The notes below the pieces were generated by a model. That model did not search any database, was not told the origin of the DNA, and was given only the letters and a program-made list of their open reading frames with translations. Made by a program: the position numbers and the translations under genes. From positions 124,001 through 188,000 of the IMG/VR virus record IMGVR_UViG_3300044680_000280: DNA of 64,000 nt; one strand, 5' to 3'. This document shows positions 39,876-41,976 of this stretch, piece after piece. The stretch's first letter is position 1, and each line of letters opens with the position of its first letter.

Positions 39876-39953
39876 TGTTATCTCCTTGGGGTGATTGAGG
39901 AAGCGTAGAAGCTCCCATTAGAGATAACTCCAAAAGTAAATTAGTAGTTTGGT

Positions 39954-40454
39954 CTACTTGAGGGTAACGAGGGGACGAGGATCATCACTGCCGGGCGTCC
40001 AAATGTCACCGGCATCATTCTGCTCATCCGCAGCTTCCAGAGTAAAAGCCTGCTCTTTCGTCTCAGCGCCCCAGATCGGCTGAATGTCTTCGAGGTTATC
40101 GTCCCCGGTAAGTTGAGCCAACGCTGACTCGATCGCGGTAACCTCCGTCTTTTTGTCGACGAGAGCCGTCGACAGGAACTGGGATAGACGGAGAGCCATA
40201 AGGTTCGAGCACTCACTGGGACTGGCGCCCTTGTCCTCCCATTCCTTGGAGAATGTGGCGAGGGGAGTTCCGTTACCATCACACTTCGAGAAGTCCTCGT
40301 AGGCCTCCAAGATGACATGAATGGTCCACTCGTCCGTACCAATGTCGGAAGGTTCGCATGTGAAGCGTACGTGAACCTTGGGAATGGCACCCGGGTTGAT
40401 TCCTTGGGAGTACAGGTTCAGGACTTGAGTGATCTTGGCAATCTGGGCGGACAT
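39954..40454 (-). CDS. Acidic hypothetical protein (166 aa)
   Basis: ATG start, operon strand. Confidence 0.6.
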   Translation of the reverse strand: MSAQIAKITQVLNLYSQGINPGAIPKVHVRFTCEPSDIGTDEWTIHVILEAYEDFSKCDGNGTPLATFSKEWEDKGASPSECSNLMALRLSQFLSTALVDKKTEVTAIESALAQLTGDDNLEDIQPIWGAETKEQAFTLEAADEQNDAGDIWTPGSDDPRPLVTLK

Positions 40455-40464
40455 GCCCGCCCCA

Positions 40465-40830
40465 CTACACCACCGCTCCGTGCTGGATCAGTACATTTCT
40501 AACAGTCCGCACGATGAGAGACATCCGACCCGCCACAAGGCGCGGGGTATCTTCAACTTCATGCTGCCAAACACGAAGGACCGTCCAACCATTCTTCCGA
40601 AGTCGGGCGTCCCGTACGTCCAAGGACTTCGAGTACTTGATGCTCGAGCGTTTCGAGGAGTGCTTGGAGCACCGTCCCTCGTCACAGTCCTGAACGAAGA
40701 TGGCAACTTTGCAGTTGGGGATGGTAACCGATGGGACAACCCCAAGCACATCCTCATTGGTCTTGAACCGAACTCCGAACTCCCATAACGTCGCACGGAG
40801 CAACTTCTCGGCGGGCGTACCAAGCGGCAT
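40465..40830 (-). CDS. Vsr/DUF559-like endonuclease homolog, catalytic motifs degenerate
   Basis: TPAEKLLR..LW..G.RF...P...KVAIFV...RD..LRKNGWTVLRVWQHE skeleton; PD replaced by PS, and DGCFWH replaced by QDCDEG. Confidence 0.7.
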   Translation of the reverse strand: MPLGTPAEKLLRATLWEFGVRFKTNEDVLGVVPSVTIPNCKVAIFVQDCDEGRCSKHSSKRSSIKYSKSLDVRDARLRKNGWTVLRVWQHEVEDTPRLVAGRMSLIVRTVRNVLIQHGAVV

Positions 40831-40865
40831 ACCCCAGACGGTTTACTAAGGGAAGTGCTGTTTTT

Positions 40866-40895
40866 TTGAACAATCAGAATGATATGTGCTATTAA
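40866..40895 (+). promoter_or_regulatory. Candidate sigma70-type promoter for the tRNA
   Basis: TTGAAC-N18-TATTAA with TG at the extended -10 position, in an AT-rich gap. Confidence 0.45.
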
Positions 40896-40903
40896 ATAAA
40901 TGA

Positions 40904-40936
40904 ATGCCCGATCGATTAGCACAATCGATCGGGCAT
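40904..40936. promoter_or_regulatory. Perfect 14-bp hairpin
   Basis: ATGCCCGATCGATT-agcac-AATCGATCGGGCAT, 14 nt upstream of the tRNA. Confidence 0.7.
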
Positions 40937-40950
40937 CGAGAAATGTGGAT

Positions 40951-41022
40951 GGGGAGTTAGTTTAACGGGCAAAACACAAGGCTGACACCCCTGCAATACG
41001 GGTTCGATTCCCGTACTCTCCA
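40951..41022 (+). tRNA. tRNA with anticodon GAC (Val-decoding) and G3:U70 acceptor stem; no encoded CCA
   Basis: Acceptor GGGGAGT/ACTCTCC+A73; D-stem GTTT/AAAC; anticodon stem CAAGG/CCCTG (one A:C mismatch) with loop CTGACAC; T-arm ACGGG-TTCGATT-CCCGT. Confidence 0.85.
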
Positions 41023-41045
41023 CACCCACAGATTTAAATGAAAAT

Positions 41046-41086
41046 AGTAAATGGGAGAAGGTTTTTCAAGCCTTCTCCCATTTACT
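41046..41086 (-). terminator. Intrinsic terminator downstream of the major capsid gene
   Basis: Perfect 16-bp stem AGTAAATGGGAGAAGG/CCTTCTCCCATTTACT, 8 nt after the MCP stop, followed by ATTTTCATTT on the minus strand. Confidence 0.75.
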
Positions 41087-41094
41087 TCACTCGC

Positions 41095-41976
41095 TTAGAA
41101 GCGGGTGATGACGAGGCGGGTGAGGCCTTTGGGGTTGAAGGCACCGATGCCGACATTTTCGAAACAAGAGAAGCCGATCGTACGAGCCTTCGGGTCATCG
41201 GCGCTCAGAACCGTCAGCTCGGTGCGGACGGGGAATCGACCGAAGTTTTCCGGCTCGGCACAGACGTACACGAACCCGACGGGCACGAGACGGCTGATGA
41301 TGATTTGGGCACCCCAGAGAACGGCCTGAAGGCCCGTCTTGAGGAGGGTCGCCTGGGACTCGATGTCCAGGATGTCACGACCGAACTTGCGGATGTCCGC
41401 GTAGTCGACCGCGTTCATGTAGATACGAGCGACGCGAAGGTCGTTTCGCTCGATCTCGGCGAAGGCATCGGCGAGAACCGACGGGCTGAGAGGAGCCACG
41501 ACGGAAACGTCGGGGTTCGTCTGGCCGGGGAGGGTGTCGAAGCCGGAGACGGCAATCGAGTCGAGAACCGCGAACACGCGCTCGTCTTCCGCGGCCTGGA
41601 TCTGCGCCTTCGCGAGGTCCTGAGCGCGTTCGATGAGGTCGAATCGGCGTTCCTTGATCTGGGTCAGCGGAATCTCGGGGTTCGAGGCACACTCGAACAA
41701 CGGGAAGATGACTCGGCGCGGCTTCTGAATGGCAAGAATGTTCTCGCCTTCTTCACCGACGACGAACGCCGTGACCTCAGGGTCCTTGTCGTAGATCGGC
41801 AAGGCGCCGTCCGGGAGCTGCTCGACGAGGAAGGTCTTGCGACCGACCGCCGTGTAGTCTCGGCGAAGGCGGAGGGGTTGGATCATCGAAGCTGCGAGCT
41901 TCGAGCGACCGGCAGCGGTCTTGATGTACTCGCTGATGATTGCTTGCTTGGTTTCGTTCGAAACTTGGGGGTACAT
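41095..41976 (-). CDS. Major capsid protein (HK97-type, 293 aa)
   Basis: Order protease-scaffold-decoration-MCP; strongly biased codons; own terminator; sequence pattern (GRKTFLVEQLPDGALPIYD, ASNPEI, AEDERVF) of HK97-fold MCPs. Confidence 0.85.
   Translation of the reverse strand: MYPQVSNETKQAIISEYIKTAAGRSKLAASMIQPLRLRRDYTAVGRKTFLVEQLPDGALPIYDKDPEVTAFVVGEEGENILAIQKPRRVIFPLFECASNPEIPLTQIKERRFDLIERAQDLAKAQIQAAEDERVFAVLDSIAVSGFDTLPGQTNPDVSVVAPLSPSVLADAFAEIERNDLRVARIYMNAVDYADIRKFGRDILDIESQATLLKTGLQAVLWGAQIIISRLVPVGFVYVCAEPENFGRFPVRTELTVLSADDPKARTIGFSCFENVGIGAFNPKGLTRLVITRF

What the first reader, a model, noticed from the sequence alone, without database searches (positions are those of the whole stretch)
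40951..41022. tRNA with Val anticodon on an alanine-type acceptor stem
Seen: anticodon GAC, with acceptor pairs G1:C72, G2:C71, G3:U70, G4:C69 and discriminator A73. Established: G3:U70 with A73 is the main AlaRS identity set and AlaRS ignores the anticodon; ValRS reads A35, C36 and A73. Inference: dual identity, so it could insert Ala at GUC/GUU codons (mistranslation) or serve a non-decoding role such as a decoy against anticodon nucleases. The A:C mismatch in the anticodon stem also allows simple decay.
Basis: partly seen in the sequence, partly recalled or inferred. Interest (0 to 1): 0.6.

Follow-up and report, generated by a model that had tools for sequence, protein, structure and literature searches.

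The report
Alanine-type tRNA with valine anticodon
A 407-kb phage from peat carries one stray tRNA gene that is built like an alanine tRNA but reads valine codons, so if it is made it should put alanine where valine belongs; it was found in this phage only and is most likely a recent, probably accidental, acquisition.

Summary
Window 40951-41022 (+) is a well-formed tRNA (Rfam 64.2 bits) with anticodon GAC, G1:C72, G2:C71, G3:U70, G4:C69, A73 and an A29:C41 mismatch. Two metagenome assemblies carry the identical sequence.

By descent it is an alanine tRNA. Its T-arm plus 3' acceptor strand occurs in 18 database stretches: 15 are tRNA-Ala, none is tRNA-Val. Bacterial tRNA-Ala(GGC/CGC) genes match it at 59 of 72 positions. 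A G3:C70 control pattern found nothing. An Ala covariance model beats a Val model by 8.4 bits.

It sits alone and antisense in a hypervariable spacer behind the major capsid gene, about 53 kb from the phage's 37-tRNA cluster, which already has a normal tRNA-Val(GAC). None of 80 related phage loci has a tRNA there.

The mismatch and the missing CCA are normal for this phage's tRNAs, so they are not signs of decay.

From published identity rules, host AlaRS should charge it and ValRS should be hindered by the G.U pair. If expressed, it would insert Ala at GUC/GUU codons. Expression and charging are untested, and no promoter was found.

It is a natural counterpart of known mistranslating tRNA-Ala anticodon variants, with no evidence of selection. 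Moderate interest.

The parts
40951..41022 (+). tRNA gene with anticodon GAC (Val), Ala-type acceptor stem (G3:U70, A73), an A29:C41 mismatch and no encoded CCA
   Evidence: ARAGORN; Rfam 64.2 bits; Ala model R1 65.0 bits against Val model R2 56.6 bits
40904..40936 (.). Perfect 14-bp hairpin 14 nt upstream of the tRNA. On the minus strand it is followed by a T-rich tail and is called terminator-like; on the plus strand it would lie in the tRNA's 5' leader
   Evidence: Inverted repeat I2; terminator-like site 40937-40903 on the minus strand
41046..41086 (.). 19-bp hairpin between the capsid gene's stop codon and the tRNA's 3' end. Probably the capsid gene's terminator, possibly acting in both directions
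   Evidence: Inverted repeat I1, 95% complementary. Not called by the terminator scanner
40897..40904 (.). Left copy of the 8-bp direct repeat TAAATGAA that brackets the hairpin-plus-tRNA unit
   Evidence: Direct repeat D2, spacing 138 nt. It may be chance in AT-rich spacer DNA
41035..41042 (.). Right copy of the 8-bp direct repeat TAAATGAA
   Evidence: Direct repeat D2
41095..41976 (-). Major capsid protein gene (HK97 type). The tRNA lies antisense just beyond its 3' end
   Evidence: PHROG phrog_2522 major head protein, E 3.3e-51; Pfam Phage_capsid, weak; 531 relatives in IMG/VR; RNA contigs cover 41254-41700
40465..40830 (-). Small Vsr-like endonuclease gene on the other side of the tRNA
   Evidence: Pfam Vsr, E 4e-6; PHROG endonuclease, E 9.6e-10; homologs in only 3 of 80 related loci

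Best explanation
This is an alanine tRNA by descent that now carries a valine anticodon. It belongs to a lineage of tRNA-Ala genes with the acceptor stem GGGGAGU/ACUCUCC, an AT-rich D-arm and the T-arm ACGGG-UUCGAUU-CCCGU. That lineage is found on bacterial chromosomes and on some phage contigs. One copy, now with GAC where its nearest relatives have GGC or CGC (a single G35-to-A change from GGC), sits as a roughly 140-bp module in the hypervariable spacer behind the major capsid gene. It is antisense to its neighbours and about 53 kb from the phage's own tRNA cluster.

Shown here: the anatomy, the Ala-type homology, its absence from related phages, the phage's second normal tRNA-Val(GAC), and the lack of any phage synthetase.

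Inferred from published identity rules: if the gene is transcribed, host AlaRS charges it with alanine, because G1:C72, G2:C71, G3:U70, G4:C69 and A73 are all present and AlaRS does not read the anticodon. ValRS sees A35, C36 and A73 but is hindered by the G.U pair, so at most part of the pool carries valine. The tRNA would then put Ala, or a mix of Ala and Val, at GUC and GUU codons.

Because it is private to this genome, redundant for decoding, and would hit about 5% of the phage's own codons, I take it as a recent and probably accidental acquisition or anticodon mutation that selection has not yet removed or remodelled. I do not take it as an evolved mistranslation device.
For: Anatomy.

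Ala descent:
- The 23-nt T-arm plus 3' acceptor strand occurs in 3 viral, 13 metagenome and 2 prokaryote-genome stretches. Fifteen are called tRNA-Ala (UGC, AGC, GGC, CGC), one is an aberrant tRNA-like gene, one is a tRNA-like RNA without a normal anticodon arm, one is cut by a contig end, and none has a Val anticodon.
- Full-length identity is 59/72 to tRNA-Ala(GGC) L147 and tRNA-Ala(CGC) L145/L149, and 57/72 to L146 and L144.
- The G3:C70 control pattern gave 0 hits.
- In the MAG that holds both matching tRNA-Ala genes, its tRNA-Val(GAC) is only 49/72 identical.
- Ala model 65.0 bits against Val model 56.6.
- Against L147 the anticodon stem shows a compensatory A31:U39 to G31:C39 change and U27.G43 to C27:G43, so the lineage evolved as a working tRNA.

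Private insertion: no tRNA in 80 capsid-linked loci; gene order kept on both sides with a variable island between; island length 0.4-5.1 kb in 40 relatives; L004 shows the empty site.

Redundancy: the cluster holds tRNA-Val(GAC) with G3:C70 and tRNA-Val(UAC).

No AlaRS, class Ia synthetase or AlaX-type domain in the phage.

Not decayed: 7th of 33 Rfam scores in its genome; stem mismatches and missing CCA are the norm.

Identity rules: PMC9976931. Strong mistranslation by tRNA-Ala(GAC) in yeast: PMC10543346.

Codon load: GUC+GUU are 68% of Val codons and 21 of 25 in the capsid gene.
Against: - No evidence of transcription. No sigma-70-type promoter is called on the plus strand, and RNA contigs cover only the capsid gene. 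Short tRNAs are rarely captured in such libraries, so this is weak negative evidence.
- Charging was not tested, and the host and its synthetases are unknown.
- Identity to the nearest tRNA-Ala genes is only 82%, and 4-5 of the 10 anticodon-stem positions differ. The anticodon arm could therefore have come from elsewhere (a chimera) rather than by point mutation.
- The search pattern fixed U70, which biases hits towards Ala. The C70 control could be run only on viral contigs.
- The covariance-model test has little power: the single held-out tRNA-Val also leaned to the Ala model by 1.7 bits.
- Records very close to this genome are withheld from the searches, so 'private' holds only against relatives about 75% identical in DNA.
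- ValRS might deacylate Ala from this tRNA in trans, by analogy with ThrRS editing of Ala-tRNA-Thr (PMC9976931). That would blunt any mistranslation.
Confidence: 0.55

Rival explanations
1. Silent relic. The module is hitchhiked DNA that is not transcribed or not processed into a stable tRNA, so it has no effect on translation.
For: It lies antisense to all neighbouring genes, between two hairpins that look like terminators for the opposite strand. No promoter is called. No RNA contig covers it. It is absent from all relatives. With A29:C41 open, the cloverleaf is predicted 5.9 kcal/mol less stable than an alternative fold.
Against: Its general tRNA score is high, 7th of 33 in its genome. All conserved tertiary positions are intact and the D-stem is fully Watson-Crick. 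One stem mismatch is typical of this phage's tRNAs. Phage promoters need not look like sigma-70 sites. The RNA data are contigs from libraries that rarely capture tRNAs.
Confidence: 0.25
2. Working valine tRNA. Despite the G3:U70 pair, it is charged mainly by ValRS through A35, C36 and A73, and simply adds decoding capacity for the phage's commonest Val codons, GUC and GUU.
For: The major ValRS determinants A35, C36 and A73 are present. Its anticodon loop CUGACAC is identical to that of a tRNA-Val(GAC) in the closest relative. GUC and GUU are 68% of Val codons.
Against: A G.U at 3:70 significantly impairs valylation of E. coli tRNA-Val (PMC9976931). The minor determinants G20 and G45 are replaced by C20 and A45. 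G3.U70 with A73 confers alanylation in every system tested. 0 of 22 other tRNA-Val genes have G3:U70. Its relatives are all tRNA-Ala. The phage already has a normal tRNA-Val(GAC).
Confidence: 0.1
3. Non-decoding role. The tRNA acts as a decoy or replacement against tRNA-targeting host defences, as a processing signal, or as a recombination site.
For: Phage tRNAs can counter anticodon nucleases (PMC10264068, PMC11555353). The same acceptor/D/T-arm module occurs on a non-decoding tRNA-like RNA with a long stem (L142). The site is a recombination hotspot.
Against: The anticodon arm is canonical, with a 5-bp stem, a 7-nt loop, U33 and A37. The paper consulted names no defence that targets tRNA-Val. 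No integrase or repeated copy of the module is present in the genome. The gene is not conserved.
Confidence: 0.05

Closest known systems
tRNA-Ala anticodon variants that mistranslate: engineered in yeast (Cozma et al. 2023, PMC10543346) and natural in humans (PMC12084884)
   Same: An alanine tRNA body with G3:U70 carries a non-alanine anticodon. AlaRS ignores the anticodon, so alanine goes in at the wrong codons. The exact GAC(Val) variant was made in yeast: 11.9% of detected peptides were mistranslated, and it was among the variants with the greatest growth reduction.
   Different: This one is natural, encoded by a huge phage, solitary and antisense in a structural-gene region. It has diverged from any known tRNA-Ala at 13 of 72 positions rather than one, and neither its expression nor its charging has been shown.
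Dual-identity tRNA-ProX families of Streptomyces and Kitasatospora (Schuntermann et al. 2023, PMC10404621)
   Same: A natural bacterial-type tRNA whose body specifies one amino acid and whose anticodon specifies another.
   Different: Those tRNAs are conserved across genera and usually lie next to a dedicated ProRS isoform. This tRNA is in one genome only, and the phage encodes no synthetase.
G3:U70 transplants giving double identity, such as tRNA-Tyr and tRNA-Phe (reviewed in PMC9976931)
   Same: A tRNA carries G3:U70 with A73 as well as the anticodon determinants of another synthetase. The tRNA-Tyr construct was charged quantitatively with either amino acid in vitro.
   Different: Those are laboratory constructs built on non-Ala bodies. 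Here the body is Ala-type and it is the anticodon that is foreign.
Ordinary phage tRNA genes, used for codon supplementation or to replace host tRNAs cut by defence nucleases (PMC10264068, PMC11555353)
   Same: A phage-encoded tRNA, in a phage that carries 37 others and a tmRNA.
   Different: It lies outside the cluster, on the opposite strand, duplicates an anticodon the cluster already has, and has conflicting identity signals.
tRNA gene remoulding, or anticodon shifts between isoacceptor families (from my own knowledge of the literature; not checked here)
   Same: A tRNA gene changes its anticodon first and its identity elements later. A relative's tRNA-Val(GAC) with an Ala-like acceptor stem but A3:U70 may be a finished example.
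   Different: Here the identity pair G3:U70 is still in place, so the switch, if it is one, is incomplete.

Membership tests
tRNA (Rfam RF00005) | Cloverleaf that scores above the family's gathering threshold | tested here: met
   64.2 bits against a threshold of 29, over the full model; 7th of 33 in its genome
tRNA (Rfam RF00005) | Conserved tertiary and loop nucleotides (U8, A14, G18, G19, A21, U33, purine 37, the T-loop, the 15:48 pair) | tested here: met
   All read directly from the sequence and ARAGORN's drawing
tRNA-Ala (alanine identity) | G3:U70 wobble pair | tested here: met
   G at 40953 pairs with T at 41019; identical in two assemblies
tRNA-Ala (alanine identity) | A73 with G1:C72, G2:C71 and G4:C69 | tested here: met
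   Read from the sequence
tRNA-Ala (alanine identity) | Anticodon NGC | tested here: not met
   The anticodon is GAC
tRNA-Ala (alanine identity) | Closest homologs are tRNA-Ala genes | tested here: met
   15 of 18 stretches sharing the 3' module are tRNA-Ala and none is Val; best full-length matches are 59/72 to Ala(GGC) and Ala(CGC)
tRNA-Ala (alanine identity) | Isotype model for Ala scores above the other isotypes | tested here: inconclusive
   Home-made models give Ala 65.0 bits and Val 56.6 bits, but the training sets are small and the one held-out Val also leaned to Ala by 1.7 bits. tRNAscan-SE was not available
tRNA-Ala (alanine identity) | Aminoacylated by AlaRS | not testable with these tools
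   Needs an aminoacylation assay
tRNA-Val (valine identity) | A35 and C36 in the anticodon, and A73 | tested here: met
   Anticodon GAC and discriminator A. Determinants as listed in PMC9976931
tRNA-Val (valine identity) | Regular acceptor helix without a G.U pair at 3:70 or 4:69 | tested here: not met
   G3:U70 is present; 0 of 22 other tRNA-Val genes collected have it; a G.U there impairs ValRS
tRNA-Val (valine identity) | Minor E. coli determinants G20 and G45 | tested here: not met
   The D-loop AACGGGCA gives C20 and the variable loop CAAU gives A45
tRNA-Val (valine identity) | Homology to tRNA-Val genes | tested here: not met
   No tRNA-Val among the nearest neighbours: the phage's own Val(GAC) is not among the 30 closest tRNAs and the MAG's Val(GAC) is 49/72. 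The anticodon-arm pattern hit no tRNA in viral contigs
Dedicated mistranslation systems (tRNA-ProX with ProRSx type) | Partner synthetase encoded nearby | tested here: not met
   No AlaRS, class Ia synthetase or tRNA_SAD domain anywhere in the 407-kb contig; the neighbours are a capsid gene and an endonuclease gene
Dedicated mistranslation systems (tRNA-ProX with ProRSx type) | Conserved across related genomes | tested here: not met
   Absent from 80 related loci and from the tRNA sets of 5 related genomes

The most novel reading that the evidence does not exclude
The phage deliberately expresses an alanine-charged tRNA that reads GUC and GUU. The purpose could be to degrade host protein quality during takeover, to diversify its own structural proteins such as the neighbouring capsid, or to keep translation going when host tRNA-Val is attacked. 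That would be the first virus-encoded mistranslation device.
Probability: 0.06. Interest if true: 0.8.

Novelty: new member of a known kind. Interest (0 to 1): 0.4.

Why it matters
Because AlaRS ignores the anticodon, tRNA-Ala anticodon variants are the textbook route to mistranslation. They have been engineered in yeast and found as rare human alleles, and bacteria have evolved dedicated dual-identity proline tRNAs. My literature searches found no phage example. This locus offers a natural, sequence-intact candidate with the exact anticodon (GAC) that was among the most harmful in yeast. It also shows how such a gene can arise: an Ala-type tRNA lands in a recombination hotspot of a huge phage. 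If it proved to be expressed and Ala-charged, it would show that viruses can carry genes that change how codons are read without changing stop codons. If it is silent or Val-charged, it is a useful warning case for annotating phage tRNAs by anticodon alone.

Tried and rejected
1. Searching viral contigs for the anticodon arm, allowing repair of the mismatch: 33 hits, all in coding sequence and none a tRNA. No Val donor for the arm was found.
2. The exact 25-nt 5' half and a degenerate 19-nt 5' pattern in viral contigs: 0 hits and 5 non-tRNA hits.
3. The G3:C70 version of the 3' module in viral contigs: 0 hits.
4. BLAST of the tRNA against GenBank phages: only weak, mixed-isotype matches (Asp, Val, Ser, His).
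5. Searching 88 genomes of the MAG's class: only the MAG itself matched.
6. The idea that the Vsr-like endonuclease carried the tRNA in from a tRNA cluster: rejected. It has no paralog in the genome, and its homologs in L002, L003 and L004 have no tRNA beside them.
7. My first guess that the related tRNA-Ala lineage is purely phage-borne or mobile: rejected. L146 lies after proB-nadD-HD-rsfS on a bacterial chromosome.
8. A sigma-70 promoter for the tRNA: my candidate TTGAAC-18-TATTAA lacks the invariant final T, and the scanner does not call it.
9. RNA evidence: the metatranscriptome contigs stop inside the capsid gene.
10. The relative's A3:U70 tRNA-Val as a clear Ala-to-Val remoulding: ambiguous, because it is equally close to a Val(CAC) and an Ala(GGC).
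11. L141 as a second Ala-acceptor tRNA with a non-Ala anticodon: it is an aberrant tRNA-like or tmRNA-like fragment.
12. Liu et al. 1997 (PMC147156) is not held, so it is cited through the review.
13. No protein structure or complex prediction was relevant.

Full report
**Observation.** The window holds exactly one tRNA, at 40951-41022 on the plus strand (ARAGORN; Rfam RF00005, 64.2 bits, E 1.2e-12, full model). From the sequence and ARAGORN's drawing, the acceptor stem is GGGGAGU paired with ACUCUCC, which gives G1:C72, G2:C71, G3:U70 and G4:C69. The discriminator is A73 and the anticodon loop is CUGACAC (anticodon GAC). The anticodon stem has a single A29:C41 mismatch, and no CCA is encoded. 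All the usual tertiary positions are intact. Contigs of two DNA runs from different peat samples and studies match 40300-41700 at every base. So U70, A35 and C41 are not assembly errors, although both runs may be sources of this assembly.

**Setting.** The window is part of a single 406,734-bp virus contig with 55% G+C. The contig carries 37 further tRNAs and a tmRNA, all on the minus strand between 218 and 246 kb. That cluster holds a second tRNA-Val(GAC) with G3:C70, a tRNA-Val(UAC) and three tRNA-Ala genes. The tRNA in question lies alone about 53 kb away, on the opposite strand. It is antisense to all its neighbours.
- On one side is the major capsid gene, 41095-41976, minus strand (PHROG major head protein, E 3.3e-51).
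- On the other side is a small Vsr-like endonuclease gene, 40465-40830, minus strand.
- A hairpin flanks the tRNA on each side, and an 8-bp direct repeat (TAAATGAA) brackets the upstream hairpin plus the tRNA. The repeat could be a trace of insertion or could be chance.

**Private to this genome.** The capsid protein has 531 relatives in IMG/VR, and the best 80 are more than 90% identical in protein. None of those 80 loci has a tRNA within about 6 kb of the capsid gene. Gene order is kept on both sides, but the stretch between the capsid gene and the next conserved gene is different in each lineage. It ranges from 0.4 to 5.1 kb in 40 relatives. In L002 the site holds a LAGLIDADG/HNH homing endonuclease. 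In L004 the capsid gene, a terminator and the Vsr-like gene follow one another with no tRNA, which looks like the empty site. The tRNA sets of five related genomes (44-48 tRNAs in four, 10 in the fragmentary fifth) contain no close homolog. One caveat applies. The visible relatives are only about 75% identical in DNA, and records very near this genome are withheld. 'Private' therefore means absent from relatives at roughly genus distance.

**Descent.** The decisive result came from searching the 23-nt T-arm plus 3' acceptor strand, which leaves position 3 and the anticodon free. It occurs in 3 viral, 13 metagenome and 2 prokaryote-genome stretches.
- Fifteen are called tRNA-Ala, with UGC, AGC, GGC or CGC anticodons.
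- One is an aberrant tRNA-like gene, one is a tRNA-like RNA with a long stem in place of the anticodon arm, and one is cut by a contig end.
- None has a valine anticodon.

Several are close over the whole length: 59 of 72 positions for a tRNA-Ala(GGC) (L147) and a tRNA-Ala(CGC) (L145, which is identical to L149), and 57 of 72 for L146 and L144. Outside the 23 positions fixed by the search, identity is still about 73%, including 18 of the first 19 bases against L145.

These relatives are ordinary bacterial genes. L146 follows proB, nadD, an HD-domain gene and rsfS. The MAG labelled Clostridia holds both the GGC and the CGC form, while its tRNA-Val(GAC) is only 49 of 72 identical to the orphan. 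The control pattern with C70, which a normal valine ancestor would have, found nothing in viral contigs.

Compared with L147, the anticodon stem carries a compensatory A31:U39 to G31:C39 change and a U27.G43 to C27:G43 change, besides the U41-to-C change that creates the mismatch. The lineage therefore evolved under tRNA constraints. A single G35-to-A change turns GGC into GAC.

**Isotype models.** tRNAscan-SE was not available. I built covariance models from 15 tRNA-Ala and 21 tRNA-Val genes, none of which had been fetched through similarity to the orphan. The orphan scores 65.0 bits on the Ala model and 56.6 on the Val model, even though it carries a Val anticodon. Held-out tRNA-Ala genes gave differences from -4 to +22 bits. 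The only held-out tRNA-Val gave +1.7, so this test is supportive but weak.

**Is it decaying?** Probably not.
- Its general tRNA score ranks 7th of 33 in its own genome, above the phage's own tRNA-Ala(GGC).
- 28 of the phage's 38 tRNAs have at least one stem mismatch, and 24 lack an encoded CCA.
- With A29:C41 open, the cloverleaf is predicted at -17.2 kcal/mol against -23.1 for an alternative fold, and repairing the pair makes the cloverleaf optimal. This is a mild warning only.

**Expression.** This is unknown. No sigma-70-type promoter is called on the plus strand. Metatranscriptome contigs from peat and moss cover the capsid gene but stop at 41254. Such libraries and contig assemblies rarely capture tRNAs.

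**Likely mechanism (inferred).** G3.U70 governs alanylation in bacteria, archaea and eukaryotes. Transplanting it confers alanine acceptance, and a tRNA-Tyr given G3.U70 was charged quantitatively with either amino acid (PMC9976931). ValRS relies on A35, C36 and A73, but a G.U at 3:70 or 4:69 significantly impairs valylation. The minor determinants G20 and G45 are absent here (sequence). The phage encodes no AlaRS, class Ia synthetase or AlaX-type domain, so host enzymes decide.

The expected product is mainly Ala-tRNA, perhaps with some Val-tRNA, reading GUC and GUU. Those two codons are 68% of the phage's Val codons, about 5% of all its codons, and 21 of the 25 Val codons in the adjacent capsid gene. 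In yeast, the engineered tRNA-Ala(GAC) gave 11.9% mistranslated peptides and was among the variants with the greatest growth reduction (PMC10543346). A device with that cost to the phage itself, present in one genome and redundant with a normal tRNA-Val(GAC), looks more like a recent accident than an adaptation. Cross-editing by ValRS could also lower the effect; this is an inference by analogy with ThrRS.

**Rivals.**
- Silent relic, 0.25. Favoured by the antisense position, the missing promoter and the lack of RNA evidence.
- Genuine valine tRNA, 0.10. Disfavoured by the G.U antideterminant, the homology, and 0 of 22 other tRNA-Val genes having G3:U70.
- Non-decoding role such as a decoy, 0.05. 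It has no specific support, and the phage-tRNA paper I read names no defence that targets tRNA-Val.

**Novelty.** Mistranslating tRNA-Ala anticodon variants are known in engineered yeast and as human alleles. Dedicated dual-identity tRNAs are known in Streptomyces, where they are conserved and paired with their own synthetase. My literature searches found no phage case. This is a new natural member of a known kind, in an unusual carrier, without evidence of function. Interest is moderate. It would be high only if expression, alanine charging and conservation were shown.

Noticed in passing
window 39876-41094; L002 6883-9495; L004 6883-7030: The spacer behind the major capsid gene is a recombination hotspot. 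Its length ranges from 0.4 to 5.1 kb in 40 relatives. In L002 it holds a LAGLIDADG/HNH homing endonuclease, while L004 has the bare capsid-terminator-Vsr arrangement.
   Followed up: yes
L122 15614-15685 (minus strand), in the relative G001: A tRNA-Val(GAC) in the closest relative's cluster has an Ala-like acceptor stem (GGAGCUG/CAGCUCC, A73) but A3:U70, and the same CUGACAC loop as the orphan. It is equally close to a neighbouring Val(CAC) and to this phage's Ala(GGC), so it may be an Ala/Val chimera or a completed anticodon shift.
   Followed up: partly
L124 431-504; L133 237-315; L140 10161-10235; L134 223-314: Related huge phages and one metagenome contig carry suppressor-type tRNAs, with anticodon CUA (called 'Pyl') or UUA (called 'Stop'). 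This hints at stop-codon reading in some of them. ARAGORN found none in this genome.
   Followed up: no
L142 1520-1625: A 106-nt tRNA-like RNA has the same Ala-type acceptor, D-arm and T-arm as the orphan, but a roughly 19-bp stem where the anticodon arm should be (fold z-score -5.35). It looks like a non-decoding tRNA mimic.
   Followed up: partly
genome 218179-246034 (outside the window): The phage carries 37 tRNAs and a tmRNA (tag ANDNGIPDLAIAA) in a 28-kb minus-strand cluster. Its tRNA-Ala(UGC) call at 232791-232866 is poor: 3 stem mismatches and no Rfam hit.
   Followed up: partly
L123 13516-13600; L125 1234-1308; L083 5822-5895; L131 9676-9749: A few non-Ala phage tRNAs also show G3:U70 (two Asn(GUU) with G73, a His and an Arg(CCU)). 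None has A73.
   Followed up: no
window 41254-41700: The capsid gene is covered by contigs of peat and moss metatranscriptome runs from studies other than the DNA runs, so this phage or a near relative appears to be active in the field.
   Followed up: partly
L146 7643-8232: The closest bacterial tRNA-Ala(GGC) is followed directly by a DDE transposase fragment, which suggests this tRNA gene is itself a landing site for mobile DNA.
   Followed up: no
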